Below are positions 6,457 to 54,574 of a DNA stretch of 64,000 nucleotides, piece by piece; position 1 is the stretch's first letter; the number at the start of each line of letters is the position of its first letter. A program made the position numbers and the translations under genes. The notes beneath the pieces are model-generated. The model searched no databases. It saw only the letters and a list, made by a program, of their open reading frames with translations, and had not been told where the DNA came from. The stretch spans positions 1 to 64,000 of the IMG/VR virus record IMGVR_UViG_3300042558_004148, one strand, 5' to 3'.

Positions 6457-6485
6457 TAAATAATCGATAATTAATTTTTATAATA

Positions 6486-6935: not shown

Positions 6936-7309
6936 AATCATCACTGCAGCCTAAAGATAGTCAATATGCTATGTTTATTGGTAGATGGCAACCACTTCAT
7001 CCAGGTCACAAAGCTATGTTTCAACAAGCTATAAACGATGGTAAGAAGGTATTAATTGCAATCAGAGATATTGAGCCAGATGAAAAAAATCCTTGGACTC
7101 CCAACGAAGTTATGCTTAATATACATTCCGAGATTAGAGATCTAGTTAGTGAAAGGCTAGCAAAGATCATAATAATTCCAGATATATGCTCAGTTGAATT
7201 TGGTAGAGGTGTTGGTTACGATATAATCGAACATATCCCACCAACTGAAATAGCCAATATATCAGCAACTGCGGTTAGAGAGGAATTAAGGAAAGAAGGA
7301 AAATTATAA
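6905..7309 (+). CDS. HxGH (cytidylyltransferase-like) nucleotidyltransferase
   Basis: FIGRWQPLHPGH and ISATAVR signature motifs; overlaps the APS kinase by 31 nt in the -1 frame. Confidence 0.8.
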   Translation: MENWSKKVHVKSSLQPKDSQYAMFIGRWQPLHPGHKAMFQQAINDGKKVLIAIRDIEPDEKNPWTPNEVMLNIHSEIRDLVSERLAKIIIIPDICSVEFGRGVGYDIIEHIPPTEIANISATAVREELRKEGKL

Positions 7310-9669: not shown

Positions 9670-9677
9670 GTATCCGG

Positions 9678-13958: not shown

Positions 13959-16448
13959 ATGAGTTTCGTACCAGAAGATAAGTTTCCAAAGCCAACCACT
14001 CCTGTATACAATACCAGTGGTGAGCAATATAATCTATCGGATCAGAGATTTAATTATCATGATGGACTACAGAATACAGACAAAGTAAAAAGCTCATCAA
14101 CTGATAATATATTCTCTACCCCCGAGGGTGCAATGGCTAGATCACAGCAGATAGGCTGTGGTGGATATCATCAGGTAACAATAAACGGGGAAACCTTTTA
14201 CAAACCGTGCGAGGATTCATCTTACTATGATCTAAGAATAGAACAATTAGATAGTGCATTAAACTTCACCTATATAGGTAATTATAGGGTGTTATCATGG
14301 GATAAACCTTTCGAGAATGTTACTAAATTTAATGGATGGATAATAGATGCATCGAATAGTAATAACTCAGGATCTATATTAGATGCGAATGACATATCAA
14401 TAGATTTTAGATATAGTATAGATGGTAAAAGCTGGTCTTTATGGACAAACGTAGGTACTGCTTTAGGTGGACTAACTAATGAATTTTCCTCTCTCTTTGA
14501 TATAGCATTAGATCCCAATAACAAATTCTATCCCGAATTTAGATTTACCTCGGTTCTAATTAATGATGACGGGACTATAATCTATAATACCGAGGAACCC
14601 ATAGATCCTACTATAGTTATAGTTTCTTTTGAATTGGACCTAGATTATGGGCCAACCCCGGAGGTTGTTATTTATAAACCAGCACCAGTTTGCACAAATG
14701 AGGTTTCATCTAGGCCGGTTGTATTTTCAAACTGTAATTTTACTTTTAATCCATATGCTGTTAATCGTGCTCTAAATTTATATCAGGATCTTAGTTTAAT
14801 GGTTAATAATGTTTTTGGACTGGAAGCAAACTATTATTCAATACAACCGCAAGCCCGAGGGAAAGATGTTATACTTAGGGAATATACTTTATTCAATGTA
14901 GTTGACGAGAAATGTGTTAAGATAGTGGTTCCGCAAAATCAGTTTCCTGACAATAAAATGAACTTTGACCCATTCGGTCTTCAGTTTGAAGAACCTTTTG
15001 AAATACAGATTGACAAAAGATATTTCGAGAGTATATTTGGTAAGGGATCGCAACCAAGGAAGAGAGATATTCTTTATTTTCCTATTGCAAATAGAATATA
15101 TGAAATAAATTCTACATATCTTTTTAGAGATTTTATGAATTCCCCTGTTTACTTTAAGGTTGAGCTTAAAAAATACACACCTAAAAGTAATACGTATTTT
15201 CAGGACCCAGCTTATAAAGAGGAGCTGGAGGGAATATCTTTAACAACAAGCGATCTATTTGGAGCTGAAACTAGAGACGAGGAAACTAAAGCTACCAAAC
15301 CACAGCAATACGCAACCACAATAACACAATTGTCTCAAGATCCTATAAGATCATATATCTATAAGGAGCTTCAAACAATTGAATATGACCTAAATAATAA
15401 CTGGACCATAGTTGCTAATAATTATTATGATTTATCTGCATCATTTAATGATGATTCTGAATTCGGGTATGACCCGGACAGATATAGAAATGCAATTAGA
15501 TATAAATTCTTACCAAAATCCGATTCGTCCACAGAATTAGCATTTACTACATGGTTTAATATAAGAAATTACTATGACAATCAGCAATTATTAAGAAGAC
15601 CATATCCTGTAATAAACTTGACCCTAGAGAATTCTACCGATGATTTATTATACTTTAATTCATTCCCTAAAAGACATAGACTTGAGAGCTGGCAATCATA
15701 CGCATCAAATCCTAATGGATATGTAGCTATTAAAGGTGACAAACATCATTCGGGTGGATATCAGGTAGTCTCAGTTTTGGATGAATATAGATTCACTGTT
15801 GTTAATAACACCACAGTTTTTTCCGAAGGCACCATAATATGGAGAATGCAAAAAGCACAAAGTCGAAATTTGATTAGTGGTTTATATCAGGATATGGATG
15901 ATTCGATAAAAGGATTCAGAGTGGATATAGTTCATTCCGGAGTAATGGATGATACAGGTAACCAGTTTTTAGAGACTGGTAGTTTAGTGATAAGATTGAA
16001 TGATACAATAATAAACTCACCTCTCCAATTTACACCAGTTTACGGTGATTGGTATTCAATCGTTGTAAACTTCTCCAATGTTTATAAGCAGATTTCTGCA
16101 AATGTATGGGAAATGTCATATGATCCGGTAAATCCTAATGAGCAGACTAGTAAACTTAACAAGGTTCACGAGGTTGTAAGAATGTTTACCGATCCTATAT
16201 TATTCAATGCTCCATCTGTAATAAATAACGATACAGCTAGTCCGTTCTATGGTACCGATGATAATTCATATAAAATATTTACTGGTCCGATATTCTTAAC
16301 TAATATTAGATTATTTAAGAATATGATAGATATAGATACACAATCTACAGTTCTGAATCAGAATGTAGTTAGAGATGCACAATTAGCACATATAATAGAT
16401 AACGCAAAACCATTATTAAAAGCACCTAAGTTTGCTAGAAATAGATAA
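13959..16448 (+). CDS. Neck/head-closure protein (T4 gp14-like core) with long N- and C-terminal extensions
   Basis: Central DVILREY...PFGLQFEEPFEIQIDKRYF...RDILYFPIANRIYEI resembles gp14; lies directly upstream of the terminase genes. Confidence 0.6.
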   Translation: MSFVPEDKFPKPTTPVYNTSGEQYNLSDQRFNYHDGLQNTDKVKSSSTDNIFSTPEGAMARSQQIGCGGYHQVTINGETFYKPCEDSSYYDLRIEQLDSALNFTYIGNYRVLSWDKPFENVTKFNGWIIDASNSNNSGSILDANDISIDFRYSIDGKSWSLWTNVGTALGGLTNEFSSLFDIALDPNNKFYPEFRFTSVLINDDGTIIYNTEEPIDPTIVIVSFELDLDYGPTPEVVIYKPAPVCTNEVSSRPVVFSNCNFTFNPYAVNRALNLYQDLSLMVNNVFGLEANYYSIQPQARGKDVILREYTLFNVVDEKCVKIVVPQNQFPDNKMNFDPFGLQFEEPFEIQIDKRYFESIFGKGSQPRKRDILYFPIANRIYEINSTYLFRDFMNSPVYFKVELKKYTPKSNTYFQDPAYKEELEGISLTTSDLFGAETRDEETKATKPQQYATTITQLSQDPIRSYIYKELQTIEYDLNNNWTIVANNYYDLSASFNDDSEFGYDPDRYRNAIRYKFLPKSDSSTELAFTTWFNIRNYYDNQQLLRRPYPVINLTLENSTDDLLYFNSFPKRHRLESWQSYASNPNGYVAIKGDKHHSGGYQVVSVLDEYRFTVVNNTTVFSEGTIIWRMQKAQSRNLISGLYQDMDDSIKGFRVDIVHSGVMDDTGNQFLETGSLVIRLNDTIINSPLQFTPVYGDWYSIVVNFSNVYKQISANVWEMSYDPVNPNEQTSKLNKVHEVVRMFTDPILFNAPSVINNDTASPFYGTDDNSYKIFTGPIFLTNIRLFKNMIDIDTQSTVLNQNVVRDAQLAHIIDNAKPLLKAPKFARNR

Positions 16449-17248: not shown

Positions 17249-19069
17249 ATGAGTAATTTACCCGCAGCAGAGCAACAAGAAACATCCTACTGGACAACAG
17301 CCAGAGTTGATGAATTATTAAGAAGAGTCGATGAGGATGGATTGGATTATAAAGAGGTTGACAATCCCTTTCATGACCAGGATCCTGAACTGAAGAGATC
17401 TAATATTCTTTGGGAATATACCGGTGATGAAATATTAGAGATGAAAAAATGTGCGGAGGACGTTAGTTATTTTGCTAAGTATTGTAAAGTAATGACTGAC
17501 ACCGGATTGGATTATATACGTCTTAGAGATTACCAATCATCAGTTCTTAGAGAATACCAGAATAATAGATTTAATATATTCTTAGCACCCCGACAGGTTG
17601 GTAAATCTATAACTTCCTCGATTATATTAGTTTGGTATCTACTTTTCAATCACGATAAAAATGCGATGATTCTTGCTAACGTCGGTGACACTGCGGAGGA
17701 ATTAATGGATAAGATAAAATCAATTATAAAGGGACTTCCCTTTTACATGAAACCCGGTATGGTTGTCAATAATGTTATGACAATGAGATTTGATAATGGG
17801 TGTAGGGTATTAGCTAAAACCACAACTAAAACTTCAGGTATTGGTTTTACCATACATTTTCTATACATGGATGAGTTTGCCCATATTAATCCTAATTTTA
17901 TGGAGGCTTTCTTTAGATCGACTTACCCGACCGTATCATCATCCAAGGTTTCCCGAATAATAATAACATCGACCCCAAATGGAATGAATAAGTTCTATGA
18001 CATTTATCAGGGTGCAATAACGGGGGAAAATAGTTTTAATCCGATCAGAGTTGACTGGTGGCAAGTTCCAGGCAGGGATGATGAATGGAAAAAGAGGGAG
18101 ATTGGTAACCTTGGAAGCGAGGAATTATTTAATCAGGAGTACGGTAATCAATTTTTAAGCTCTTCGAGTTTACTTTTAGGTTCAGATGAATTAAAAAAGA
18201 TTAGAAGAAACGAGGTTGAGTATGAATGGAGGGAATTAAGTGCTCTTCATTATGGTGATGTAAATTACGAGAATCTATTATGGCATCCAAAGTTTGATAT
18301 AGATAAATGTAATCAGCCGGGGAAAAAATTTGTTATATCAATAGATCTAAGCGGTGGCGGTAGCGGTGACTTTACTGTTATAAATATATTTAAAGTAACG
18401 CCTCTTCCTAAGTTTATAATAGAAAAAATAGAAGAGTTTGAAGATGAAGCTGATTTTTTCGGCCTTGTCCAGGTTGGTGTGTTTAGGGATAATGAGATAA
18501 AATTAGAAGAGGTAACGAAGCTTCTTCAATTATTATGTAGCGAAATCCTTACTGTGGATAGAGTTAAAATAGCTCTCGAGATGAATTATAAAGGTGAATT
18601 GCTTTATGAGAAATTGATGGCGAGGGAGGATTTTTTCGATGAGATGTTTTTATTTACCAAGCACACAGAAGCTGCTAGAGTCATGAAAGTTGGTATAAAG
18701 TACAACGAGAAAAATAAAATGAAATATTGCGAGGTACTAAGAGGATTGATAAAAAGCGATAGAATACTGGTAAATGATAAAAAATGGACGGTACCTGAAC
18801 TTTTCACCTTTGGTCTAAATAACAGAGGCACATATTCTAGCCAGAGTGGACACGATGACGTTGCAATGACACTGGTTAATCTTCCCGGATTATTCGAGGG
18901 ATATGACTTTAACCAATTGGTCGGGGAGGTATTTGACGAACTTGAAGATAATTCATATAAGGATCTCATAATAAAAAAACTTGAGGATGGACAAACTGGA
19001 GAAGAAGACGGAAGAGGTCCAAGTACGAAGGACGGTAAAATGTTTGGAGACTTTAATAGCATGATGTAA
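17249..19069 (+). CDS. gp17: Terminase large subunit (T4 gp17-like)
   Basis: Walker A APRQVGKS, Walker B LYMDEFA, ITSTPNG motif, nuclease SIDLSGG...DF and HDD. Confidence 0.95.
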   Translation: MSNLPAAEQQETSYWTTARVDELLRRVDEDGLDYKEVDNPFHDQDPELKRSNILWEYTGDEILEMKKCAEDVSYFAKYCKVMTDTGLDYIRLRDYQSSVLREYQNNRFNIFLAPRQVGKSITSSIILVWYLLFNHDKNAMILANVGDTAEELMDKIKSIIKGLPFYMKPGMVVNNVMTMRFDNGCRVLAKTTTKTSGIGFTIHFLYMDEFAHINPNFMEAFFRSTYPTVSSSKVSRIIITSTPNGMNKFYDIYQGAITGENSFNPIRVDWWQVPGRDDEWKKREIGNLGSEELFNQEYGNQFLSSSSLLLGSDELKKIRRNEVEYEWRELSALHYGDVNYENLLWHPKFDIDKCNQPGKKFVISIDLSGGGSGDFTVINIFKVTPLPKFIIEKIEEFEDEADFFGLVQVGVFRDNEIKLEEVTKLLQLLCSEILTVDRVKIALEMNYKGELLYEKLMAREDFFDEMFLFTKHTEAARVMKVGIKYNEKNKMKYCEVLRGLIKSDRILVNDKKWTVPELFTFGLNNRGTYSSQSGHDDVAMTLVNLPGLFEGYDFNQLVGEVFDELEDNSYKDLIIKKLEDGQTGEEDGRGPSTKDGKMFGDFNSMM

Positions 19070-19138: not shown

Positions 19139-22100
19139 ATGGCAAATAAGGTAAAAATAGACTATTCTCAATTCAGAGCATCTGGAGTCTACACACTTGA
19201 GTTTGACGCATCTCAGAATGTTATATTAACATCACAAACGATAAGACTGGTTGTTGGATTTTCTAACAAAGGTCCTTTTAATACTCCGGTTTATATACCG
19301 GATGTTACTACAATGATATCGATCTTTGGAGATGTTGATAGATCATTAGAAAACAAAGGATCTTTTTTCCAAAGATCCATACTAACATGTTTAAATACAG
19401 GTCCTGTTTTCGCGTTAAATCTTTTAAGATTAAATGATGATGAGGAGACTGCAAATCCTGATGAAGTTACGTATCAGTCATATTCACTTGATACCGAAGA
19501 ATATAACGGTGAAGTAACCAGTAGGTTATATTCATCATACTATAACAAGGAGAGATTTTGGTTCGCTGATCCAAATTATTTTCTTGCTACATTAAGTGTT
19601 GCTGATCAGGGTAAACTATTCAATCTAACAAATCTTGGTAAGTCACCTATGAGTATAATTACTAGAAAATCTACGGATTCGTCTAGACCACTTAGAGGAT
19701 ATGATATTTTTGCTATTGATTGGTATGGTGCAGATAACGTTCCTAGTTTTATGCATCCATATGACTATATGGCTGATTATTTCATAGACGTTATCGCAAT
19801 ATATGGTGATTGGACAAATTATCAAGCATTAGCTCTAGATCCTAAATGGAGCACGTACTTTACTGATAATGGATTTATAAAAAGTAGAATTGATAATTTC
19901 CTATCTGAACCTGATGTATCTATAGTTACTTCAGTTACTGGATGTATCATACCTGATTTCGTTGATCTTAATGGTGTTACTCAATACATTCAGGTATTAA
20001 TAAATAACAGTACTCCTTCAACAGGGTTATTTTGTGCAATAGATGAACAAGCTTTCGATGACATATGTGCTAATGGATCTAAAATAGATTTAGTAGGTAA
20101 TCACCTTATCGATGAATTAACCGGTGATAGTGATCTAGCTACTCCAAGAATAAATTTCTTAAGTTATGATCAGGTTCTTGTTTCTGACTACCTTTATACA
20201 CAGAACGTAATAGGAGTAACAGGAGCTACTGGATTTAATAGTGCTACTGGAGCAACTGTTTATACTACTGGATCTAAAGTGGGTACGCTATATACACTAA
20301 CCGGAAATTCTGGAGCAACAGCTGGTATCGTTCAGCAATCATTCTTACCTTATGATGCTAATGCATATGATGGTGGATTACACTATCTACAAACTAGTGG
20401 AACGTACGGAACAACAGCGGGATATTTACAGAATGCAGCTAATGTTAATTCACTTAAGACTTTCTTAACTGTAACATCGTCTAATGACGAGAAATTCATA
20501 TTGGGTGTTGTTTCTGGATATACTGGAGGTTTAACTGGCGCATTACTTAACCAATTTGCAGAGGCAGATTTAGTTAAACTTAAAGTTACTGGTACCAGAG
20601 ATATCTCGGGGGCACTTAGAATTTTCTGGACTCATCCATTAGATACATCATTCTATAGAGGACAGGGTATAACGGTTACACCTACTTTTAATTTAACGTC
20701 ATATAATACGGGAGCTTCTGGAAGTAATCCTTCATTCTATACTAATGCTTACCAATTTGGTAATTCCGATTATCTTGATATTATCAACGTAGCTACACCT
20801 AGTGGGGTTACAGGACCGGGAGCACCTACTGGAACATCAAATGTGCTTGTCGGATATAATGCTTCTGCTCTTTTCCAGGATAACAAATATGCTGAAATAA
20901 CTGATGGAGATATCGCTTGGACCAGCTCGGACGGAACTTCACTTAGATACTTAGGTTTTGAATCAACAGTTGATAAGGACCAGTTTAATATGGTTTATAC
21001 CAGAGCATTTAGTAATGTATCAAGAGCTAACGAAACAATTACAAACATACCGGCATTTGCTAGCACATATGCTTCAAATAATATAGGTCTTCCAGTAGGA
21101 ACACAAGATTTTGATATAATTTCTCAGGAAGGTTCAATTAACCAATTTGTAGATTGTACTAAAATAGACGTTACCACATTCTTGGTTACACTGGATAGTA
21201 ATAGTAACGTTCCATTCTCGGTAGGAGATTTGGTAGTTTCTACTGATCTTGATATATGTGAACCTGCTACGGGTAACAGACAAAGCAGATTAGCAAAGAT
21301 AACATCTGTTGCTATGACAACAACATTAGGAACTTATAGAGTTACCTCAGCTAGACCTGTACTTTATTATACATCAGGAACAGGAATTAGAGTTCAGAAA
21401 TTCAAATCAATTGCACAGTTTACAAGATCTTTTGATTTTAGTTATCTAAGCGGATTTACTATGAACGAATCTCATAGACCAAACGGAAGCGACGCTAGAA
21501 TTTCTGAAATATTGGATGTTATGTATGACACTAATATAGCTAAAACACTGGCTGCTAAGGACGTTATATCATTCAGATACATCGTGGATACTTTCTCTGG
21601 TCAAATATTACCTAACTCTAAATACCAATTAAGTAGATTGGCTAAGCTTAGACAACAGGCATTAGCATTAATAAACGCTCCTTCAATGGCTCAATTTAGA
21701 GCAAGTACGGATCCTAGATTTACTGATGCACCTACAGCGGCTAACCCATATCCAAGATTAAATACTGCTTATATTGTAGATGGTGGTAATTTATCTTTGA
21801 ATCCATCTTATACATTTAGTTTACCTAGTGAGGACGAAGGAGCTAAGTATGCTGCTTTCTATTCTCCTTATATCACAGTAAGAGAAAATAATAGAAACGT
21901 GGAGGTTCCACCTTCTGCTTACGTTTCTAATAACTTCCTAAGAAAATTTGCAAACGGTGAACCTTATGCAATTATAGCAGGACAGAAAAGAGGGGTTATC
22001 AGTGGAGGTAATATAGTTGGTGTTGAATATGATTTTACCGACGAGGATAGAGGAAATCTTGAACCATTCGGTATTAACCCAATTATAAAAAGAAGAGGTA

Positions 22101-22492
22101 TTGGAGTAGTTATTTTCGGTAACCAAACTGCATATCAGCAAGTTAATTCCGCATTTAACCTTGTTCACGTTAGAGATTTGCTAATCAGCGTAGAAAATGA
22201 CGTACAGGAAATATTAGCAAATTATCTATTTGACTTCAATGACGATTCTATCAGACTTGAAATAAAAACATTAGTGGATAACTACCTAGATGGAGTTAGA
22301 GCAGGTGGAGGTATTTATGCTTATCAGACTGTTATGGATGCTTCGAATAATACCCCTGCAATCATCGATATGAATATGGGAATAATCGACATCATAATCG
22401 AACCAGCTAGAGGTATACAGAAATTCATTAATAGAATCACTGTTACTAGAACTGGCGGAATCGCATCAGGAGGATTTATACAATTTGCATAA
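19139..22492 (+). CDS. gp18: Contractile tail sheath protein (gp18-like), enlarged to 1117 aa
   Basis: ASGVYTLEFD N-terminus; C-terminal VPPSAYVS, FGINPI...VIFGNQT, VHVRDLL sheath motifs. Confidence 0.92.
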   Translation: MANKVKIDYSQFRASGVYTLEFDASQNVILTSQTIRLVVGFSNKGPFNTPVYIPDVTTMISIFGDVDRSLENKGSFFQRSILTCLNTGPVFALNLLRLNDDEETANPDEVTYQSYSLDTEEYNGEVTSRLYSSYYNKERFWFADPNYFLATLSVADQGKLFNLTNLGKSPMSIITRKSTDSSRPLRGYDIFAIDWYGADNVPSFMHPYDYMADYFIDVIAIYGDWTNYQALALDPKWSTYFTDNGFIKSRIDNFLSEPDVSIVTSVTGCIIPDFVDLNGVTQYIQVLINNSTPSTGLFCAIDEQAFDDICANGSKIDLVGNHLIDELTGDSDLATPRINFLSYDQVLVSDYLYTQNVIGVTGATGFNSATGATVYTTGSKVGTLYTLTGNSGATAGIVQQSFLPYDANAYDGGLHYLQTSGTYGTTAGYLQNAANVNSLKTFLTVTSSNDEKFILGVVSGYTGGLTGALLNQFAEADLVKLKVTGTRDISGALRIFWTHPLDTSFYRGQGITVTPTFNLTSYNTGASGSNPSFYTNAYQFGNSDYLDIINVATPSGVTGPGAPTGTSNVLVGYNASALFQDNKYAEITDGDIAWTSSDGTSLRYLGFESTVDKDQFNMVYTRAFSNVSRANETITNIPAFASTYASNNIGLPVGTQDFDIISQEGSINQFVDCTKIDVTTFLVTLDSNSNVPFSVGDLVVSTDLDICEPATGNRQSRLAKITSVAMTTTLGTYRVTSARPVLYYTSGTGIRVQKFKSIAQFTRSFDFSYLSGFTMNESHRPNGSDARISEILDVMYDTNIAKTLAAKDVISFRYIVDTFSGQILPNSKYQLSRLAKLRQQALALINAPSMAQFRASTDPRFTDAPTAANPYPRLNTAYIVDGGNLSLNPSYTFSLPSEDEGAKYAAFYSPYITVRENNRNVEVPPSAYVSNNFLRKFANGEPYAIIAGQKRGVISGGNIVGVEYDFTDEDRGNLEPFGINPIIKRRGIGVVIFGNQTAYQQVNSAFNLVHVRDLLISVENDVQEILANYLFDFNDDSIRLEIKTLVDNYLDGVRAGGGIYAYQTVMDASNNTPAIIDMNMGIIDIIIEPARGIQKFINRITVTRTGGIASGGFIQFA

Positions 22493-22522: not shown

Positions 22523-23077
22523 ATGGCAGGATTACCACATTTTCAAAATTCACTTTCAGGAACAAACAGATTTGAACCTGTTTACCTGAATCAATTTGAA
22601 GTTACTATAATCCCACCAGCTGCAGTAGCTGGTGGTGATCTTTTATTGCAACATGTAACTAAAGTTAGTGGTTTATCTTTAGATAAACACCCTGGATTGG
22701 CTACTCAGAAATATAAGTTTGCTAAAAGAAATTATGCTGGTGCTAAACCAGACCAAACATACCTTGATTTAAGTTTAAGCTTCAATGTCAATCTTAATGA
22801 TGACAATTCGATGTATGTATTTAAGACTTTAAGACAATGGTCAGACCTTATATACAACCCATTAACTGGAGCTATGGGTCTTAAAAATGATTATGTTGGA
22901 ACCATAGTAATATCAATTTTCAATAAGCAAGGTGACGTTTACAGAAGAATCACATGTAAGGATGCTTTTATAACTAAACCAATAAGTCCGATGAATCTTA
23001 ACTATACCTCAACGGATCTTTATAAAATAGACGATCTTCAGTGGGCGGTTGATTATTGGGAAGATTTATTCCTATAA
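22523..23077 (+). CDS. gp19: Tail tube protein, copy 1 (gp19-like)
   Basis: Follows the sheath; NQFEV, LRQWSDLIYNP, VDYWE motifs; GATAAATA at 22506-22513. Confidence 0.85.
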   Translation: MAGLPHFQNSLSGTNRFEPVYLNQFEVTIIPPAAVAGGDLLLQHVTKVSGLSLDKHPGLATQKYKFAKRNYAGAKPDQTYLDLSLSFNVNLNDDNSMYVFKTLRQWSDLIYNPLTGAMGLKNDYVGTIVISIFNKQGDVYRRITCKDAFITKPISPMNLNYTSTDLYKIDDLQWAVDYWEDLFL

Positions 23078-23093
23078 AAATTAAAAAATATAA

Positions 23094-23669
23094 ATGGCAG
23101 GATTACCACATTTTACGAACTCTAGAGCAGCGATAAACAATTTTGAACCTGTTTATCTTAACCAGTTTGAGGTTATTATTAACCCACCTGCTGGTATAAT
23201 CGATGCATCAACTACATTCAATGGTGAGGGTATATTAGCTCAGCAAGTTAAATCTATCACAGGTTTAGCTGTTGATATAACTGCTAATGACCCAATACAG
23301 CAAAATTATAAATTTGCTACCAGAAGATATGCTGGCGGTGAACCATCAACAACAGATATGACATTATCAATGGAATTTGAGGTCAATCTAAATGATGCTA
23401 ATTCAATGACCGTATATAAGATACTTAGACAGTGGTCGGATTTAATATACAATCCATTAACTGGAGCAATGGGACTTAAATCTGATTATGTTGGATCCAT
23501 GAGTATATCAATATTTAATAAAAGAGGTGATGTATTCAGAAGAATTAGAATACCTTCTTGCTTTTTAAGTGAGGCAATAAACCCGATGGAGCTTGATTAT
23601 GAAACACCAGCAATATACACAATTAATGCTAGCTGGATATGTGATTACTGGGAAGATTTATTCCTATAA
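23094..23669 (+). CDS. gp19: Tail tube protein, copy 2 (gp19-like paralog)
   Basis: Shares MAGLPHF, FEPVYLNQFEV, LRQWSDLIYNPLTGAMGLK and DYWEDLFL with copy 1. Confidence 0.85.
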   Translation: MAGLPHFTNSRAAINNFEPVYLNQFEVIINPPAGIIDASTTFNGEGILAQQVKSITGLAVDITANDPIQQNYKFATRRYAGGEPSTTDMTLSMEFEVNLNDANSMTVYKILRQWSDLIYNPLTGAMGLKSDYVGSMSISIFNKRGDVFRRIRIPSCFLSEAINPMELDYETPAIYTINASWICDYWEDLFL

Positions 23670-27241: not shown

Positions 27242-27874
27242 ATGCAAAAGAAAGAGAAAAACATCCAAAAATTAGCAGAAGATTTCATAGTAGCTAGAAC
27301 TGATTCGTCATTTAGCCTATTATTCGAAAGACTTAGACCAGGAATACTCAATCACTGTTTCCTTATTGTAAAAGAGCAAGAATTGGCACAGGATGCTTTT
27401 CTAAACACCATGACAAAGATATGGACAAAAATTGAACAGTATAACGGTGAGCGTGGAAATTTTTCGACATGGTGCTATAATATAGCTAGAAATGAATCAT
27501 TACTTCTGATGAAATCTAGAAAAAGATATTATAATCACAGTGACAGCGAACTTGAATTTCTATCTTCCAAAAATACAATAGGTGATCTTGGAGGAATTTA
27601 TATGATAGAAGATGATCCAACAAATACCTTTTTTAATGACGGTGAAAGCTTGGATGTAATATACGAATCTGTTTTGGATGAGATTAGAGCACTACCCGAA
27701 TTATATAGGGACATAATGATAGATCGTGAGATAAATAATATGAAGTATAAGGACATAGCTGAAAAATACGACATAAAGAAAAGATCTATAGCTACCAGAA
27801 TAAGAAGGGCTAGATGTAAAATTAGAAAAAGTATAGACGGAAACATTACGCTTATGAGCGGATATAAAAAATAA
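27242..27874 (+). CDS. Sigma-70 family (ECF-like) sigma factor
   Basis: Region 2 AQDAFLNT...NFSTWCYNIARNE; region 4 helix-turn-helix MKYKDIAEKY...SIATRIRRAR. Confidence 0.88.
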   Translation: MQKKEKNIQKLAEDFIVARTDSSFSLLFERLRPGILNHCFLIVKEQELAQDAFLNTMTKIWTKIEQYNGERGNFSTWCYNIARNESLLLMKSRKRYYNHSDSELEFLSSKNTIGDLGGIYMIEDDPTNTFFNDGESLDVIYESVLDEIRALPELYRDIMIDREINNMKYKDIAEKYDIKKRSIATRIRRARCKIRKSIDGNITLMSGYKK

Positions 27875-34387: not shown

Positions 34388-34747
34388 ATGGCTAAAGAAT
34401 ATGTTAAAAACAGCGAGCTTTTAGCAGCTGTAATAGAATCTAAAAGTAAGGGTCAACTTACACCCGATACAATAGATATGTTTATGTTAATGATAAACGG
34501 AATATCTAAAAAAATGTCATATAAGGATCCGGAAGATAAGGAGGATTGTATGGCATTTGCAATGGAGGATCTTTGTAAATATTGGAATAGATTTAACCCA
34601 GAGAAATCAAATAATCCATTTGCTTATTATACACAGATAGCTAAAAATGGATTTGCTAAGGGATGGAAAAAAATACATCCGCCAAAAAATCCTAAAACAA
34701 TACCTTTCAGCTATATAACTGGTGAGGATAATTCGTATAACGTTTAA
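34388..34747 (+). CDS. gp55: Late-transcription sigma factor (T4 gp55-like), very short (119 aa)
   Basis: EYVKNSELL and RFNPEKSNNPFAYYTQIAKN signature motifs. Confidence 0.8.
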   Translation: MAKEYVKNSELLAAVIESKSKGQLTPDTIDMFMLMINGISKKMSYKDPEDKEDCMAFAMEDLCKYWNRFNPEKSNNPFAYYTQIAKNGFAKGWKKIHPPKNPKTIPFSYITGEDNSYNV

Positions 34748-34753
34748 TCTATT

Positions 34754-35239
34754 ATGGTAGATATAAAGAAAGTAAAACCTAACGGAGATCATAAATCTGG
34801 AAAATATGCACCAAGAAATCCGGATAAGTATATAGGAGATATACACAATATCATCTATAGATCTTCGTGGGAATATAGATTCTGTATCTACTGTGATACT
34901 AATGATTCTATATTAAAGTGGAGCTCAGAACCAGTTGCTATAGATTATTATAACCCTCTTGATAAAAAAGATCACAAGTATAATGTTGATTTTTATATAA
35001 AGGTGCAAAGGGAAGATCAAACCGAACAGGACTGGATAATAGAAATAAAACCAGAAAATCAAACGAAGAAACCCATATATGAGGGGGTTAATACATTAGC
35101 AAAACTTAAATCATATAATAGAAATATGCAGATTTGGATAACAAATCAGGCAAAATTCAAATCTGCCAAAGTATGGGCGGAGAAGAGAGGATATAAATTT
35201 GGTGTTGTTGATGAGAATTTTTTATTTAAAAGTAAATAA
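34754..35239 (+). CDS. gp4: Head completion nuclease (T4 gp4 / TnsA-N-like)
   Basis: IIYRSSWE, WSSEP, Y-x-VDFY, IEIKP, NQAK...AK motifs. Confidence 0.85.
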   Translation: MVDIKKVKPNGDHKSGKYAPRNPDKYIGDIHNIIYRSSWEYRFCIYCDTNDSILKWSSEPVAIDYYNPLDKKDHKYNVDFYIKVQREDQTEQDWIIEIKPENQTKKPIYEGVNTLAKLKSYNRNMQIWITNQAKFKSAKVWAEKRGYKFGVVDENFLFKSK

Positions 35240-35841
35240 TGTATTCTAATCTTGTTTTGGAATATAGAGATTCCATTGAAATTGGTAAAAACGTATTTAC
35301 CGAGACCGATTTATATTTTTCTGACAATTACTTCTTTTCTAATAAGGAAATAATACAATTTAAACCACCGTTTATACCGGGTACAATATATAATTTTAAT
35401 TACTTAACTGATACCAGGTTAAGTGAGACCAGAAAATTCATAGATAGAAGACCATTGATATTATGTACAAATGTATACCAGAATCCAAGTTCAGGCACGA
35501 TTATAGAAGGAATAGATATTATAACAGTTCCACCCCGCATAAGAATAGATATAATAGGAAATTTTTATGACCAATTCTATTCTCAGGTAGAATCCAATTA
35601 TCTATCATTTCAGACAGGAGGTGCAATTACCCCTGTTAATTTAAAAAAGCCAATATTAGAAAATCTACTAAGGAATACCGGATATAATTTCTCACTGTTC
35701 GGTTTTAAATATAAATTTATAAGAAATCCAAGAATAATATCCAATAAAGATTGGGCTAAAATTCCATATCTTACTGATAGTAACATAGAGGGGTTAAGCT
35801 TACAAACGATATATAAGGAATATCAATCGAAATTAATTTAA
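35239..35841 (+). CDS. DNA end-protector-like protein (T4 gp2-like)
   Basis: PG-x-IY-x-F-x-Y...D-x2-PL pattern; synteny between gp4 and the portal. Confidence 0.55.
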   Translation: MYSNLVLEYRDSIEIGKNVFTETDLYFSDNYFFSNKEIIQFKPPFIPGTIYNFNYLTDTRLSETRKFIDRRPLILCTNVYQNPSSGTIIEGIDIITVPPRIRIDIIGNFYDQFYSQVESNYLSFQTGGAITPVNLKKPILENLLRNTGYNFSLFGFKYKFIRNPRIISNKDWAKIPYLTDSNIEGLSLQTIYKEYQSKLI

Positions 35842-35878
35842 TCTTTTGACTAGAATAAAACATATACTTTATAAATAA

Positions 35879-37477
35879 ATGGCAGGTTTTGTAGATAATA
35901 ATGATCCTTCTCAAACTCCGGTAATACAGAGAATTAGAGATTCTGTAAGAAAAATTAGTTCATTTGGTATGAAATACGATGACATGGTCATCCGTAATTC
36001 ACAGGCTGTCGGTGTTACTGAGGCTGCTTTTCTTAATAAGAATAAGTCCAACGTTGAGGATGAAAGCATGCTATGGACTTTAGCGAAGCAGGATATATCA
36101 TCCAGACAATTCATAGGATATTTTGACAAGGATTATAAAGGAAAAAGAGACTATCTTAGAAAATTCTCATTAAACCCTGAAGTTGAATGGGTTCTTGATA
36201 CCATATGTGACGAAGCAATATCTTACGATCCATCAAATTTCTTTGCATATCCTGATTTCATAGATCTTAGCGACGTTAATGAAAAAATCAAGGATGATTT
36301 ATATGACTCGTATAAAAAACTTTACGATGTTTGGGGATTTTCTGATGACATAACAGCTTGGCAATATTTTAGACAATTTATAGTAGATGGATTTCTCTCA
36401 TTTGAAATAATATATGATAATAAAGGTGAAAATATAATCGGATTTAAGGAACTAGATCCAATTACACTTATACCTAGTGTTGAGAAACAAATAGACGGTA
36501 GCTATCTTAGTACATGGACGCAATATCCTCAGGATCCCAAAAGAAAAAGAGTATTATATGATCCGCAGATTATATACATTTCATATGCAAAGGGAAATAG
36601 CATATCAAGAGTTAGCTACATAGAGAGATTAATAAGACCTTATAATATTCTAAGAATTATAGAATATACTAGGGTTATATGGTCAGTCATGAATGCATCG
36701 TTTAAACTTAAGATGACCATTCCAATAGGAAGCAAATCTCAGCAGAAGGGTATGCAAACTCTGGGTGAACTGATGAGCATCTATAAGGAGGATATCCAAT
36801 TGAATGATGATAGTGGCGAGCTTACAGTCGACGGTAGACCTAAAATACAGTTTTATAAAAACTATTTGATGCCTTCCGGTGTTAACGGAACTCCAACCAT
36901 AGAGCCTATAAACACTGAGGGACCAAATCTTAATGATCCACAACCTTTATCATATTTCTTTGACAAATATATTTTAGAATCTAAAGTTCCTCCCTCCAGA
37001 TTTCATAATCCAGACGGCGGAACAACTTCACCATATTCGAATGGTGCGGAAGGGCTTGATAAGGAAGAAATTAGATTTGCCAAATTTATAGATAGACTTA
37101 GATCAGTATTCCAGGAGATATTATTAAAACCTTTATGGATACAAATGGTTAAAAAGCATAAATCACTTGACGATGATTTTATGTTTAAGAGTCAGCTTGG
37201 ATTGGATTATGTTTCCGATAACCCATTCAAGTTAAATCAGGAGATGGATTTAATAAATAAAAGGAAGGAAGCAGTTGTCGCAATGACTGGATTAATGGGT
37301 GATGAGGAAAAACCATATTTTTCTAGTGCATTTCTTATAGAGACTTTTCTTGGAATATCCAAACAGGATATTGATGCAAATAAAGAAGCATTGGAAAGAA
37401 AAGAAAAAGAGAAGAAAAAAGAGGAAGGTAAAAAAGAAGAGGGCGGAGAAGAGGAAGCTCCGGAAGTAACACTATAA
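35879..37477 (+). CDS. gp20: Portal protein, copy 1 (T4 gp20-like)
   Basis: PEVEWVLDTICDEAI, FRQFIVDG, YIERLIRPYNILRIIE, SKVPPSR, EEIRFAKFIDRLR. Confidence 0.9.
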   Translation: MAGFVDNNDPSQTPVIQRIRDSVRKISSFGMKYDDMVIRNSQAVGVTEAAFLNKNKSNVEDESMLWTLAKQDISSRQFIGYFDKDYKGKRDYLRKFSLNPEVEWVLDTICDEAISYDPSNFFAYPDFIDLSDVNEKIKDDLYDSYKKLYDVWGFSDDITAWQYFRQFIVDGFLSFEIIYDNKGENIIGFKELDPITLIPSVEKQIDGSYLSTWTQYPQDPKRKRVLYDPQIIYISYAKGNSISRVSYIERLIRPYNILRIIEYTRVIWSVMNASFKLKMTIPIGSKSQQKGMQTLGELMSIYKEDIQLNDDSGELTVDGRPKIQFYKNYLMPSGVNGTPTIEPINTEGPNLNDPQPLSYFFDKYILESKVPPSRFHNPDGGTTSPYSNGAEGLDKEEIRFAKFIDRLRSVFQEILLKPLWIQMVKKHKSLDDDFMFKSQLGLDYVSDNPFKLNQEMDLINKRKEAVVAMTGLMGDEEKPYFSSAFLIETFLGISKQDIDANKEALERKEKEKKKEEGKKEEGGEEEAPEVTL

Positions 37478-37481
37478 TAAG

Positions 37482-39098
37482 ATGGCAGGATTTTTAGACT
37501 TTTTAAAACCGAATCAATCAGCTTTAGGTAATATACTAAAGAATCTTGGAAACATATCAAAATTTGGTATGGAGTACGATGATATGGTTGTAAAAAATTC
37601 TCAGGCTATTGGTAAGACTGAGGGATTTTTCTATAATCAGGATGGTAATGGATTTACAGAAAATGATGCTTTCTATTGGACATCATCTTATCAGGACACT
37701 AAGGTAAGAAAATATATTGCATATTTTGACCGTGATTATATTGAGAAAAGAAATTATCTTAGAAAATTTTCACTTAATGGCGAAATAGAGTTCATATTAG
37801 ATACAATAACTGATGAAGCCATAGTATATGATGATAGAAATTATTTTGCTCAGCCTTCGTTCGTAAATCTGGATCTTAAGGATAAAGTAAAGGATAAGAT
37901 ATCAGAACATTATAATAAGATTTATAATGTATTTGGGTTTCAGAACACAATACTAGGATGGCAATATTTTAAGCAGTTTTTAATTGATGGATTTCTTGCA
38001 TTTGAAATAATATATGACAGTAAGGGAAAAAATGTGATAGGATTTAAAGAATTGGATCCAACTTCACTTCAGCCCATAGTCGAAAAGGTAGGGGAAGAGG
38101 AACATAAACAATTTTGGATACAATATCCAAAGAATCCTCAGATGACCAGGAAGTTGACCAACGAGCAGGTAATTTATATTTCTTATGCTAAAGGAAATAT
38201 GATAACTAGAGTTAGCTATGTTGAGAGATTAGTTAGATCATATAATATTCTTAGAATAATGGAAAATTCCAGAATTATATGGAACGTAATGAACTCGTCA
38301 TATAGATTAAAATTCATTATACCTATAGGTACCCAATCACAGCAAAAAGCAATGCAGAATCTTGGTCAATTAATGTCAAACTACAAGGAGGACATTAATA
38401 TCAATGATTCATCTGGTGAATTAACAATAAACGGTAAACCTAAAATTCAATTCTACAAGAATTATTTATTTCCCGAAAAGGATGGACAAAGTCCACAAAT
38501 AGAATCCCTTAATCCTAGTGGTCCTGATTTCAACGTAATGGAAAATGTGGTTTATTTTTTCAATAAGCTTAAAATGGATTCTAAGATACCCTACGCTAGA
38601 TTTGCGTCTAGAAACAGCACTCCTGGGAATTATCAGACAAGCATAGATCAATTGGAGAGAGATGAAATTAGATTCGAGAAGTTTCTGAGAAGACTTAGAT
38701 CAATTTTTCAGGAAATATTAACGAAGCCACTCTATATCCAGATGTGTCTGGATAATCCTGAATTGTCCAGAGATAAGAACTTTAAAGCAAATATAGGACT
38801 TAATTATAATAGGGATAGCGAATTTGAGGAAATGGTCGAGATGACCAATTACACAAAAAGAACCGAATTTATAAATGGTCTTGGCGAGCTCAAAGTTAAG
38901 ATAGGCGAGGAGGAGAAAGGATATTTTGATAAGAACTTTTTAATACAAAGATTCCTTGGTATGAATCCGGATCAAATAAGAATGAACGAGAAGTATAAGG
39001 AAGCTGAAGAAAAATTAGCTGAAAAAGCGGGAGGTGAAAAACCTGCTGAGGGTGAAGCCCCTGCTGAGGGAGAAGAAGCACCGGAAGTAACACTATAA
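37482..39098 (+). CDS. gp20: Portal protein, copy 2 (T4 gp20-like paralog)
   Basis: Same motif set as copy 1 (EIEFILDTITDEAI, YVERLVRSYNILRIME, DEIRFEKFLRRLR); both end EEAPEVTL. Confidence 0.9.
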   Translation: MAGFLDFLKPNQSALGNILKNLGNISKFGMEYDDMVVKNSQAIGKTEGFFYNQDGNGFTENDAFYWTSSYQDTKVRKYIAYFDRDYIEKRNYLRKFSLNGEIEFILDTITDEAIVYDDRNYFAQPSFVNLDLKDKVKDKISEHYNKIYNVFGFQNTILGWQYFKQFLIDGFLAFEIIYDSKGKNVIGFKELDPTSLQPIVEKVGEEEHKQFWIQYPKNPQMTRKLTNEQVIYISYAKGNMITRVSYVERLVRSYNILRIMENSRIIWNVMNSSYRLKFIIPIGTQSQQKAMQNLGQLMSNYKEDININDSSGELTINGKPKIQFYKNYLFPEKDGQSPQIESLNPSGPDFNVMENVVYFFNKLKMDSKIPYARFASRNSTPGNYQTSIDQLERDEIRFEKFLRRLRSIFQEILTKPLYIQMCLDNPELSRDKNFKANIGLNYNRDSEFEEMVEMTNYTKRTEFINGLGELKVKIGEEEKGYFDKNFLIQRFLGMNPDQIRMNEKYKEAEEKLAEKAGGEKPAEGEAPAEGEEAPEVTL

Positions 39099-50849: not shown

Positions 50850-50857
50850 GATATATA
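50850..50857 (+). promoter_or_regulatory. Candidate late promoter GATATATA
   Basis: 26 nt before the protease/capsid operon. Confidence 0.65.
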
Positions 50858-50883
50858 AATAACATAAAAAACACAATTAAGAA

Positions 50884-52870: not shown

Positions 52871-54574
52871 ATGAAATTGATCAACGAACAAGAAATCTAT
52901 GATACATGGTCTCCGATTATCGAGAGCAAAGCTGGTATCACAGAAGAAGGAAAAAAAGGATGGTTGACTAAATATTGTCATTATCATTCATTAAACGAGT
53001 CTGCAGGTGCTTATAACACTTTAGGAGTTGTTAACGGTATGGGTGCAGTTGCGCCTCCAACATACCCAGGAATGGGTTCATTCTCAGGTTCTAATGCTAA
53101 CGCTGGTTTCTATAACACAGCAAACCAAGGATCTGGTGACAAATTCCCATCATTATTACCATTAGCTATTCAGGTAGCTGCTAAGACTGTAGGTTTTGAT
53201 ATCGTTCCTGTTATCCCTATGTCAGGACCAACTGGTATCTTATCTTACTTAGATTACGTATACTCAGGTGGTAAACTTGCTGGTGCTACATCTGCTACTT
53301 CAGGAGATTCATTAGCTAAAGCTCCTACAATGATTAAATTCCCAGTTGCACAAGGATCTTCTGCAGGTCTTACAGGTGCTACTGCTGGTTCATTCCAAGT
53401 AGGTGCTTCTTATACAGTTACTAATGGAGGTGTATTAACACTTAAATTCGTAGGTTTATCAAGAATCGATGGTTTCCCAATCTACGAGATTGAAAACATT
53501 ACGGATGGTTACAACGTAGCTGGTATTATCACAGCTTCAGGAAGCTTCCAAGTTACTGGAGGTTCTCCAGCTTCAACTCTTTTTACTGCAGGTTCTGCAC
53601 AATTAGTTAAAGCTTTAGAAGATCATATCCAAGGTTTCTCTGGTGCTGGTTTCAACAACACTACAGATTGGCAAGGTCCTTACGTAGATGGTACTAAAAC
53701 TTACAACCCTATGTTAAGAGGAGTTGGTGAGTCTACTTACTACAACTCAATGGGTCTTTCTACTTTCACTAAATTCGTGGAGGCTGAAACTTTCCAAGTT
53801 GCTGCTTCAGTTACAACTGAGCAAATCCAAGATCTTAACAAACAATTCGGTATCGACGTTATCTCAATGATCGAGAACGCATTGGTTAATGAGGTTTCTC
53901 AAGCAATTAACAAACACATCTTATCAAGAGCATTCGCTTTAGGTTGGTCTAACCATAACCAATTCTTCAATGTTGAAAACCAAAACCTTAACTTGAACTT
54001 AGTTCTTGGTGGTGCTGCTGGTACAACTTCAGCTTATGTTAACAAATCGGATGCTACACAATCTATGCCTATCCCAGCTGGTCCAGCTACAGGAGGTTAC
54101 GAGAACTTATCAACTCTACAAAGAAGATTATTCTCAAGAATCCTTGCTGGTGCTAACGTGGTAGCTAATAGAGGTAGAAGAGGTCCTGCTAATTTCGTAG
54201 TAACGAATGCTGCAGTTGCAAGTGCACTTCAAGATATTTCTCAGTTCACTTTCGCTCCATTCTCTAATACACTTACTCAAAATAACGGTACTTTATACCC
54301 TGTAGGTTCTCTTGCTGGTATGACAGTTTACGTAGATCAGAACATGAACTACAGCGATACAAGAGTATTAATTGGTAGAAAAGGTGGTGATGATGAGCCA
54401 GGATTAAAATTCATGCCTTACATGATGGCAGAATCAATTCAGACTATCTCTGAAGGTACTATGTCACCTAAAATCGCAGTTAAATCTAGATATGCTTTAG
54501 TAGAAGCTGGTTTCTTACCTGAAACTATGTACTTAACATTATACGTTAACGTACCTGCTGGTGGTTTAGCATAA
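52871..54574 (+). CDS. gp23: Major capsid protein (T4 gp23-like)
   Basis: GFDIVPVIPMSGPTG, EVSQAINKHIL, ANRGRRGPANF, YPVGSL...VYVD, KSRYALV. Confidence 0.93.
   Translation: MKLINEQEIYDTWSPIIESKAGITEEGKKGWLTKYCHYHSLNESAGAYNTLGVVNGMGAVAPPTYPGMGSFSGSNANAGFYNTANQGSGDKFPSLLPLAIQVAAKTVGFDIVPVIPMSGPTGILSYLDYVYSGGKLAGATSATSGDSLAKAPTMIKFPVAQGSSAGLTGATAGSFQVGASYTVTNGGVLTLKFVGLSRIDGFPIYEIENITDGYNVAGIITASGSFQVTGGSPASTLFTAGSAQLVKALEDHIQGFSGAGFNNTTDWQGPYVDGTKTYNPMLRGVGESTYYNSMGLSTFTKFVEAETFQVAASVTTEQIQDLNKQFGIDVISMIENALVNEVSQAINKHILSRAFALGWSNHNQFFNVENQNLNLNLVLGGAAGTTSAYVNKSDATQSMPIPAGPATGGYENLSTLQRRLFSRILAGANVVANRGRRGPANFVVTNAAVASALQDISQFTFAPFSNTLTQNNGTLYPVGSLAGMTVYVDQNMNYSDTRVLIGRKGGDDEPGLKFMPYMMAESIQTISEGTMSPKIAVKSRYALVEAGFLPETMYLTLYVNVPAGGLA

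What the first reader, a model, noticed from the sequence alone, without database searches (positions are those of the whole stretch)
35879..39098. Two full-length tandem portal genes sharing an identical C-terminal tag
Seen: two intact gp20-like paralogs, well diverged internally, both ending in acidic/Lys-rich linkers and EEAPEVTL (CCGGAAGTAACACTATAA identical at 37460 and 39081). Established: tailed phages normally have one portal gene forming a homo-dodecamer at a unique vertex. Inference: a hetero-dodecamer (for example 6+6), a second specialised vertex, or alternative heads. The conserved C-terminal octapeptide may be a shared docking or cleavage signal.
Basis: partly seen in the sequence, partly recalled or inferred. 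Interest (0 to 1): 0.62.

Follow-up and report, generated by a model that had tools for sequence, protein, structure and literature searches.

The report
Conserved pair of portal genes
A widespread group of giant freshwater phages carries two diverged T4-type portal genes side by side, both kept under strong selection, which suggests a portal ring built from two different proteins, something not reported for any tailed phage.

Summary
Window 35879-37477 (532 aa, "A") and 37482-39098 (538 aa, "B") are intact T4 gp20-type portal genes, 51% identical and 4 nt apart. Both end in EEAPEVTL.

The window is the start of a complete 373-kb freshwater jumbo-phage genome. The pair comes from one old tandem duplication:
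- 117 related IMG/VR contigs belong to the same clade, and every one not cut at the gene edge has the A-B tandem.
- A and B form mirror-image sister clades.
- The nearest single-copy relatives lie outside both clades.

Both copies evolve under equally strong purifying selection (dN/dS about 0.02), so neither is decaying or redundant. Differences fixed between A and B cluster in the stem, clip and channel loops and are nearly absent from the capsid-facing wing.

The C-terminal tag is selected at protein level and co-varies between A and B within genomes. It is a lineage version of an ancestral gp20 trait, since T4 gp20 ends ...EQEDF.

My best reading is that both are essential subunits of one hetero-oligomeric portal, most simply A6B6. 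This is inferred and not shown: no expression, proteomic or usable complex-model evidence was obtained. I found no published precedent. A tandem tail-tube duplication is present in all four related dual-portal genomes checked.

The parts
35879..37477 (+). Portal paralog A (532 aa), T4 gp20-like; the less gp20-like copy by score
   Evidence: ORF. PF07230 at 193.7 bits and phrog_213. phmmer hits T4 gp20 structures 6uzc, 3ja7 and 9lu6. The AF2 model's top Foldseek hits are T4 gp20, E 4e-16. Orthologs are 64-100% identical across the IMG/VR contigs. dN/dS 0.023.
37482..39098 (+). Portal paralog B (538 aa), T4 gp20-like; slightly closer to single-copy relatives
   Evidence: ORF. PF07230 at 233.4 bits. 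phmmer to 3ja7, E 5e-23. The AF2 model's top Foldseek hits are T4 gp20, E 4e-17. Orthologs are 66-100% identical. dN/dS 0.016. Single-copy sisters are 46-48% identical to B and 43-44% to A.
37478..37481 (+). 4-nt spacer between the stop of A (TAA, followed in frame by a second TAA) and the ATG of B; no room for a promoter or terminator, so co-transcription is likely
   Evidence: Sequence. In 72 loci with complete pairs the spacer is 1-23 nt, most often 4 or 9. No terminator-like site lies between the genes.
37394..37474 (+). C-terminal low-complexity tail of A (about residues 506-532, K/E/G-rich), ending in the tag EEAPEVTL (37451-37474)
   Evidence: Translation. pLDDT below 50 for residues 518-532. 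Tail length and sequence vary between relatives but the x-V-T-L end is kept in 41 of 54 distinct A orthologs.
39012..39095 (+). C-terminal low-complexity tail of B (about residues 511-538, E/A/G/P-rich), ending in the tag EEAPEVTL (39072-39095)
   Evidence: Translation. pLDDT below 50 for residues 517-538. The tag is kept in 48 of 54 distinct B orthologs, and 53 of 54 genomes keep it on at least one copy. The last 6 residues co-vary with those of A within genomes.
34388..34747 (+). gp55-like late sigma factor, part of the conserved gene block upstream of the portal pair
   Evidence: phrog_234, E 1e-15. Present upstream in 49 of 49 full-flank loci and in the single-copy sister loci.
34754..35239 (+). 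gp4-like head completion (head closure) nuclease
   Evidence: phrog_218, E 6e-46, and PF08722. Conserved upstream in 49 of 49 loci and in single-copy sisters.
35239..35841 (+). Conserved 200-aa protein of unknown function directly upstream of portal A
   Evidence: No Pfam or PHROG hit. Detected in 44 of 49 full-flank loci and weakly in the single-copy lineage L178.

Best explanation
One ancient in-place tandem duplication of the T4-type portal gene gave two paralogs, and both became indispensable. They are probably co-transcribed as neighbours in a late morphogenesis block. Most likely they co-assemble into a single hetero-oligomeric portal ring at the unique capsid vertex. The simplest arrangement is alternating A6B6, which lowers the ring's symmetry from 12-fold to 6-fold.

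Both subunits keep the same capsid-facing wing and the same N-terminal motif. Each has its own fixed version of the channel loop, the tunnel loop and parts of the clip. In T4 these are the elements that touch DNA, terminase and neck.

Both carry a flexible acidic C-terminal tail ending in a hydrophobic tip (x-V-T-L) that would lie inside the head. The tails probably bind one common partner, perhaps the scaffold or protease core, or serve as part of the headful sensor.

Shown: the duplication, its age and retention, the selection, where the fixed differences lie, and the tag's co-variation. Inferred: co-transcription, co-assembly in one ring, the stoichiometry, and the tail's partner.
For: 1. 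Both proteins are full portal proteins. Pfam, PHROG, PDB sequence and fold matches are all to T4 gp20, and the two models have the same order of secondary-structure elements.
2. There was a single duplication. The A clade (SH-aLRT 100), the B clade (100) and A+B (96) exclude all single-copy relatives, and the two subtrees mirror each other.
3. Neither copy has been lost. Of 117 clade contigs from many samples, all 113 that are long enough show both genes.
4. Purifying selection is strong and equal. dN/dS is 0.023 and 0.016, mean dN is 0.170 for both, r = 0.95. This argues against redundancy or either/or use.
5. The genes are tightly linked, 1-23 nt apart with no terminator between them, as expected for matched dosage.
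6. Of 28 fixed A/B differences, 17 lie in the stem, clip and tunnel (146 columns) and only 1 in the 165-column outer wing. Odds ratio 4.2, p = 3.6e-4.
7. Each paralog conserves its own channel loop (A GPNLNDP, B GPDFNVM), tunnel loop and inner clip loop. Both therefore appear to line a DNA channel and to face the capsid in the same way.
8. The N-terminal motif (MAGF...FGM.YDDM) is shared and invariant.
9. The C-terminal tag co-varies within genomes. Using 14 cluster representatives, 3.43 of the last 6 residues match against 2.43 expected, p = 0.0003. The tag is unique to these two proteins among about 490 ORFs.
10. [quoted passage not shown] An A/B ring would offer two kinds of inter-subunit groove.
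Against: - There is no direct evidence of co-assembly. The complex prediction returned 'no answer'.
- No RNA or proteomic data were found.
- The AF2 monomer models have only moderate confidence (mean pLDDT 59.6), and the clip and stem are poorly modelled.
- Clustering of fixed differences in the clip and channel fits equally well with two separate homo-dodecamers that have different outside partners.
- Domain boundaries were transferred from T4 gp20 at about 20% identity and are approximate.
- The shuffle test for tag co-variation reduces but does not remove phylogenetic non-independence.
- No heteromeric portal has been described, so the prior probability is low.
Confidence: 0.5

Rival explanations
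1. Two separate homo-dodecameric rings with different jobs. For example, one portal could serve packaging and terminase docking while the other serves neck and tail attachment and ejection, at two different vertices. Alternatively a second portal-like ring could be stacked inside the head.
For: Fixed differences concentrate in the clip, stem and channel, the parts that meet terminase, neck and DNA. The capsid-facing wing is the same in both. Both copies are essential. Mimivirus uses distinct exit and packaging portals, though built of unrelated proteins (PMC2430901).
Against: In tailed phages head assembly is nucleated by a single portal (established knowledge; PMC9958956). No tailed phage with two portal vertices is on record in the searched literature. 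Both paralogs keep every portal element, the same N-terminal motif and the same co-varying C-terminal tag, so neither looks specialised for a different location. There is one terminase and one neck gp14-like gene.
Confidence: 0.15
2. Either/or use. The two paralogs form alternative homo-dodecamers used in different hosts or conditions or for different particle types, so a given virion contains only one.
For: Two complete genes, each with all portal features. A tandem pair of tail-tube paralogs in the same genomes could be read as a second set of parts.
Against: Conditional use predicts weaker or unequal constraint and occasional loss. Instead dN/dS is about 0.02 for both, rates are equal, and no copy is lost on any of 113 informative contigs. 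The 1-23 nt spacing leaves no room for separate regulation. Only one major capsid protein, protease, sheath and terminase gene is present.
Confidence: 0.1
3. One true portal plus a portal-derived accessory. B would be the portal and A would have taken a non-ring or regulatory role, such as an assembly chaperone, a decoy against portal-sensing host defence, or a minor subunit present in only a few copies.
For: A scores lower against Portal_T4 (193.7 against 233.4 bits). A is slightly further from single-copy relatives (43-44% against 46-48%). A had the longer stem branch in one tree (1.21 against 0.84).
Against: With better sampling the stems are equal (0.50 and 0.48). A keeps the channel loop, tunnel loop, clip, crown, termini and tag, each conserved. 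A's constraint equals B's. Nothing has been lost that a non-portal role would make dispensable.
Confidence: 0.1

Closest known systems
Bacteriophage T4 portal protein gp20 (Pfam PF07230; PDB 3JA7, 6UZC, 9MKB, 9LU6)
   Same: - Same family and fold for both paralogs.
- The surrounding gene set is T4-like: terminase, sheath, tube, gp4-like, gp55-like, gp21-like protease and gp23-like capsid protein.
- T4 gp20 also has an acidic C-terminal tail with a hydrophobic last residue...QDPDQEQEDF.
   Different: - T4 and about 1,800 other GenBank phages with this portal type have one gene that forms a homo-dodecamer (PMC4493910). Here there are two genes, 51% identical, both conserved.
- The tails are longer low-complexity linkers ending in x-V-T-L.
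- Sequence identity to gp20 is only 21-23%.
Single-copy portals of other huge phages (LR756500, LR756501, LR756502, Lak megaphages; IMG/VR lineages L094 and L178)
   Same: - These are the closest relatives, at 34-48% identity.
- They have the same upstream gp55-like and gp4-like genes.
- They have low-complexity C-terminal tails with a hydrophobic or aromatic residue at or near the end.
   Different: - Each has one full-length portal gene. LR756501 has an extra 101-aa fragment only.
- They lie outside the A+B clade.
Virion rings and shells made heteromeric by duplication: T4 gp23/gp24 (capsid hexamers and vertex pentamers) and T5 tail tube pb6 (a fused duplicate forming a pseudo-hexameric trimer). 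From my own knowledge, not tested here.
   Same: A structural paralog is retained after duplication and takes a distinct, fixed position in one symmetric assembly, changing its effective symmetry.
   Different: None of these involves the portal. Here the two genes are unfused, similar in size and equally constrained. Co-assembly is only inferred.
Cellular homomeric rings that became obligate hetero-rings after duplication (for example group II chaperonins, the V-ATPase c-ring, archaeal PCNA). From my own knowledge.
   Same: The same evolutionary pattern: an old duplication, both copies essential, mirrored phylogenies, and fixed differences near subunit contacts.
   Different: These are unrelated proteins. 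This is an analogy of mechanism only.

Membership tests
T4-like portal protein (gp20; Pfam PF07230 Portal_T4) | Sequence match to the family profile above the curated threshold | tested here: met
   A scores 193.7 bits and B 233.4 bits against a cut-off of 22.9, each covering nearly the whole 433-position model. Both match phrog_213 portal protein.
T4-like portal protein (gp20; Pfam PF07230 Portal_T4) | Portal fold with wing, stem, clip and crown regions | tested here: met
   The top Foldseek matches of both AF2 models are T4 gp20 chains (E 4e-16 and 4e-17, probability 1.0), followed by other phage portals. Model confidence is only moderate (pLDDT 59.6), and the clip and stem are poorly resolved.
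T4-like portal protein (gp20; Pfam PF07230 Portal_T4) | Assembles into a dodecameric ring at one capsid vertex | not testable with these tools
   Complex prediction on the two cores returned 'no answer' (score 0.01). No structural or proteomic data exist for this phage.
T4-like portal protein (gp20; Pfam PF07230 Portal_T4) | Encoded among T4-type morphogenesis genes | tested here: met
   The window encodes a large terminase, sheath, tube, gp14-like neck domain, gp4-like, gp55-like, gp21-like protease and gp23-like capsid protein.
Canonical single-gene homo-dodecameric portal (the usual state in tailed phages) | One portal gene per genome | tested here: not met
   There are two full-length Portal_T4 genes in the complete 373-kb genome and on 113 related contigs. 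Among 1,816 GenBank records, only LR756501 and LR756503 show a second hit, and in LR756501 it is a fragment.
Obligate heteromeric ring formed by paralogs (proposed) | Both paralogs retained and under purifying selection across the clade | tested here: met
   dN/dS is 0.023 and 0.016 with equal dN. No losses were seen. The A and B clades mirror each other.
Obligate heteromeric ring formed by paralogs (proposed) | Physical co-assembly of the two paralogs in one ring at defined stoichiometry | tested here: inconclusive
   The one complex prediction gave no answer. The indirect evidence (linkage, shared wing and termini, paralog-specific channel loops) is compatible but not decisive.

The most novel reading that the evidence does not exclude
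This clade of 270-435 kb freshwater jumbo phages builds its portal as an obligate hetero-dodecamer of two paralogs (A6B6). That would give a six-fold rather than twelve-fold DNA channel with two alternating sets of channel, tunnel and clip loops. It would be the first heteromeric portal known in any tailed phage or herpesvirus. It may be paired with a tail tube made of two paralogs.
Probability: 0.45. Interest if true: 0.85.

Novelty: new variant of a known kind. Interest (0 to 1): 0.72.

Why it matters
The portal is the most conserved machine of tailed phages and herpesviruses. It is taken to be a ring of twelve identical subunits, and models of the symmetry mismatch with the five-fold vertex, the pentameric terminase and the six-fold tail all start from that.

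A natural, ancient and strictly retained two-gene portal would show that the ring can work with two kinds of subunit. It would also provide a system in which alternate subunits can be altered independently, to ask which channel, tunnel and clip loops act in packaging, headful sensing, genome retention and neck docking.

It is also a clear viral example of a duplicated ring subunit becoming indispensable. The phages are common in lakes, rivers, estuaries and wastewater (19 studies), so material for proteomics or cryo-EM is within reach even without a cultured host.

Tried and rejected
- **Complex prediction.** A residues 84-508 with B residues 84-512 gave 'no answer' (score 0.01, controls not run). 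It counts neither for nor against binding.
- **Expression.** No run holding the region is on record as RNA. The one guessed-RNA run (a viral metagenome) has a few short contigs over both genes, and the estuary metatranscriptome has none.
- **Tag as an overlapping T4-type late promoter (CTATAAAT).** Rejected. The final Leu and Thr codons vary freely among relatives while the peptide is kept. TATAAATA is not enriched in the window: 12 found, 16 expected.
- **Tag identity due only to recent gene conversion.** Largely rejected. Codon identity at shared residues is 0.59 in the tail and 0.50 in the body. Occasional conversion remains likely, for example a 31-nt exact run in L050.
- **Assembly artefact or collapsed strains.** Rejected.
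- **Tag as a general targeting signal on other virion proteins.** Rejected. No other ORF among about 490 has an acidic tail ending in x-T-L.
- **Other duplicated head or neck genes.** The neighbouring 310-aa and 309-aa ORFs at 8737-10607 are unrelated to each other, and one is a glycosyltransferase. There is only one terminase, sheath, protease and main capsid gene.
- **Alternative genetic code.** Not needed. Coding density under code 11 is 90%. Lak phages are recoded, with 6 in-frame TAG codons in their portal.
- **Large protein-database searches.** The family assignment was already clear.
- **Literature.** Four full-text searches found no report of two portal paralogs in one phage.
Full report
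**What is there.** The window is the first 64 kb of a 373,485-bp IMG/VR virus genome with direct terminal repeats, rated 100% complete. GC content is about 33% and nearly all genes are on the + strand. At 35879-37477 and 37482-39098 lie two intact ORFs of 532 aa (A) and 538 aa (B). They are 51% identical over 523 residues. Both match Pfam Portal_T4 (PF07230), at 193.7 and 233.4 bits against a cut-off of 22.9, and both match phrog_213. Both hit the solved T4 gp20 structures by sequence. AlphaFold2 models of both have mean pLDDT 59.6, with a confident wing and a poorly modelled clip and stem. The two models share the same order of helices and strands. Their best structural matches are T4 gp20 chains, E 4e-16 and 4e-17. 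These are the only Portal_T4 matches in the genome. The shared ending EEAPEVTL and the 18-nt identity are at the stated coordinates.

**Context.** The surrounding genes are T4-like:
- a gp14-like neck domain (13959-16448)
- large terminase (17249-19069)
- sheath (19139-22492)
- two tube-like genes (22523-23669)
- a gp55-like late sigma factor (34388)
- a gp4-like head-completion nuclease (34754)
- a conserved 200-aa protein of unknown function (35239)
- the two portal genes
- a PfkB kinase and a DNA ligase
- further on, a gp21-like protease/scaffold gene (50884) and a gp23-like capsid gene (52871)

A and B are 4 nt apart, and no terminator-like site lies between them.

**Not an artefact, and not rare in nature.** Independent contigs from two other metagenomes cross the A/B junction without a single difference. 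Near-identical DNA occurs in lake, river, estuary and wastewater metagenomes from 19 studies. Two scans of IMG/VR gave 117 contigs of the same clade, and the first scan alone found 218 relatives of which only the best 80 were kept. All 113 contigs that are not cut off at the gene edge carry the A-B tandem in the same order. A orthologs are 64-100% identical and B orthologs 66-100%, while A against B stays near 50%. The five whole genomes of the clade examined (CheckV completeness 99-100%, three with terminal repeats) are 270-435 kb. The gene block from the 723-aa ORF through gp55-like, gp4-like, the 200-aa ORF, A, B, an optional PfkB gene and the ligase is conserved.

**One old duplication.** In maximum-likelihood trees the A and B orthologs form two reciprocally monophyletic groups, with SH-aLRT 100 and 99 in the large tree and 100 and 100 in the second. 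Their internal topologies mirror each other. A+B together form a clade (96) that excludes every single-copy relative: IMG/VR lineages L178 and L094/L092, the published huge phages LR756500, LR756501 and LR756502, and Lak-A1. Whole-record scans show one full portal gene in LR756500, LR756502 and Lak-A1, and one plus a 101-aa fragment in LR756501. The other sister loci show one portal gene within their flanks. Among 1,816 GenBank phage records with a gp20-like portal, only LR756501 and LR756503 have a second match. Those two records have the same length and identical hit coordinates. The single-copy sisters have the same gp55-like and gp4-like genes upstream, so the duplication happened in place.

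**Both copies are needed.** Pairwise Nei-Gojobori estimates give dN/dS of 0.023 for A and 0.016 for B. Mean dN is 0.170 for both, with r = 0.95 across genome pairs. Together with the absence of losses, it makes plain redundancy, dosage or conditional either/or use unlikely.

**Where A and B differ.** I used the T4 gp20 domain limits (PMC4493910), transferred through the alignments, so the boundaries are approximate. I classed each column by conservation within A and within B across 54 distinct pairs. Of 28 positions fixed differently in A and B, 17 lie in the stem, clip and tunnel-loop segment (146 columns). Only 1 lies in the 165-column outer wing, the part that contacts the capsid in T4. The odds ratio is 4.2, p = 3.6e-4. 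Each paralog conserves its own channel loop (A GPNLNDP, B GPDFNVM), tunnel loop and inner clip loop. At the equivalent of T4 N323, a neck-contact residue, A has a fixed D and B a fixed N (PMC12929587). Both share invariant N-terminal residues (MAGF...G-M-x-Y-x-D-M). So both look like working channel-forming portal subunits that face the capsid in the same way but present different surfaces to DNA and to outside partners.

**The tails.** Nearly all orthologs end in a low-complexity E/K/G/A/P linker of variable length, predicted disordered, and a terminal x-V-T-L with variants VTI, ITL, FTL and ATL. Of 54 distinct genomes, 36 have the tag on both copies and 53 on at least one. Some lineages have replaced it on A (...PPAT...PPQE) or on B (...EETA). 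The last residues change in parallel in both paralogs of a lineage: APEVTL/APEVTL, APAVTL/APAVTL, PPQVTL/PPQVTL, TPAVTI/TPAVTI and ETATL/DTATL. With one representative for each of 14 sequence clusters, within-genome identity of the last six residues is 3.43 against 2.43 in shuffles, p = 0.0003. Synonymous differences between the two tags are common, and codon identity is only slightly raised, 0.59 against 0.50 in the body. The tag is therefore kept mainly by selection on the peptide, with occasional gene conversion, such as a 31-nt exact run in L050. It is not a DNA signal; the overlapping late-promoter idea was tested and dropped. No other protein of the genome carries it. The general design is ancestral. 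T4 gp20 ends ...QDPDQEQEDF, and the single-copy huge-phage portals end in G/A/P/E-rich tails with a hydrophobic or aromatic residue at or near the end...APTF...EFEF...SGY and ...IDLGL. In T4 the C-terminus belongs to the crown, inside the head, and its last residues are disordered (PMC4493910). I found no stated function for it.

**Interpretation.** The most economical reading is that A and B are two subunits of one portal ring, most simply alternating A6B6. This accounts for five things:
- the strict co-retention
- the equal constraint
- the tight linkage, which suggests matched dosage
- the common capsid-facing and terminal features
- the paralog-specific inner and clip surfaces

It would turn a 12-fold ring into a 6-fold one. 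In T4 the 12-to-6 step is made between gp13 and gp14, and gp13 docks between the clips of neighbouring gp20 subunits. An A/B ring would have two kinds of such groove. I put this reading at about 0.5.

The main rival is two separate homo-dodecamers with different partners, for instance a packaging portal and a tail portal. It fits the clip and channel differences equally well. It conflicts with single-portal nucleation of heads, has no precedent in tailed phages, and is not suggested by any loss of portal features in either copy. Either/or use and 'portal plus derived accessory' are disfavoured by the selection data.

For the tails, I favour a tethered short motif that binds one shared partner inside the prohead, or that takes part in sensing the packaged DNA. 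This is inference only.

**What failed.** No RNA or protein evidence is available. The models' clip and stem are of low confidence, so no interface analysis in three dimensions was possible.

**Novelty.** Both proteins are members of a well-known family, which makes this a new variant of a known kind. The conserved two-gene state is, as far as four full-text searches show, undescribed. If co-assembly is confirmed it would be the first heteromeric portal.

**A related observation.** The same genomes carry a tandem pair of tail-tube-like genes, 56% identical, at 22523-23077 and 23094-23669. The pair is conserved in all four dual-portal genomes checked. Three single-copy huge phages and one sister contig, itself only about 50% complete, show one such gene, and one sister genome shows no match. 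Two ring-forming parts of the DNA conduit were therefore duplicated in the same lineage.

Noticed in passing
window 22523-23077 and 23094-23669: A second tandem paralog pair lies directly after the sheath gene. The two tail-tube-like proteins (184 and 191 aa, 56% identical) match phrog_32623 and, weakly, tail-tube PHROGs. Both are conserved in tandem in all four dual-portal genomes checked. Single-portal relatives (the L094 contig, which is only about 50% complete, LR756501, LR756502 and Lak-A1) show one match, and the LR756500-like genome shows none. The tube and the portal may have been duplicated in the same lineage.
   Followed up: partly
window 1008-5582, and genome 370838-373486: A very large ORF (1,524 aa as called from 1008, open back to the window start) is made of many 110-aa repeats that are 74-84% identical to each other. 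Similar repeats occur at the other end of the genome, so the gene probably runs across the record ends. A 662-aa ORF is open on the opposite strand, as expected for repeats.
   Followed up: no
window 5635-7309 and 8737-9669: This is a cluster of host-like sugar and sulfur metabolism genes next to the structural genes: a sulfotransferase, an APS-kinase-like P-loop protein, a cytidylyltransferase-like protein and a family 9 (heptosyl)transferase. It suggests modification of the cell envelope or virion.
   Followed up: no
window 35870-35877: The T4 late-promoter consensus TATAAATA sits 1 nt before the ATG of portal A, too close to drive that start codon. Another copy lies 22 nt before the protease gene (50854-50861). 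The motif is not enriched overall, with 12 found against 16 expected.
   Followed up: partly
window 27242-27874 and 34388-34747: There are two phage sigma-factor-like genes in the window: a 210-aa sigma-like protein (phrog_1740) and the 119-aa gp55-like late sigma factor.
   Followed up: no
genome 242317-243219 (outside the window; locus L103): A second, short gp23-like gene (300 aa, PF07068 at 40.6 bits) lies far from the main capsid gene at window 52871-54574. It may be the gp24-like vertex protein.
   Followed up: no
locus L091 (LR756501, 15166-15351): The 735-kb published huge phage LR756501 has a 101-aa open frame matching only the C-terminal end of Portal_T4 (22.4 bits), far from its full portal gene. 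It may be a remnant or a crown-only protein.
   Followed up: no
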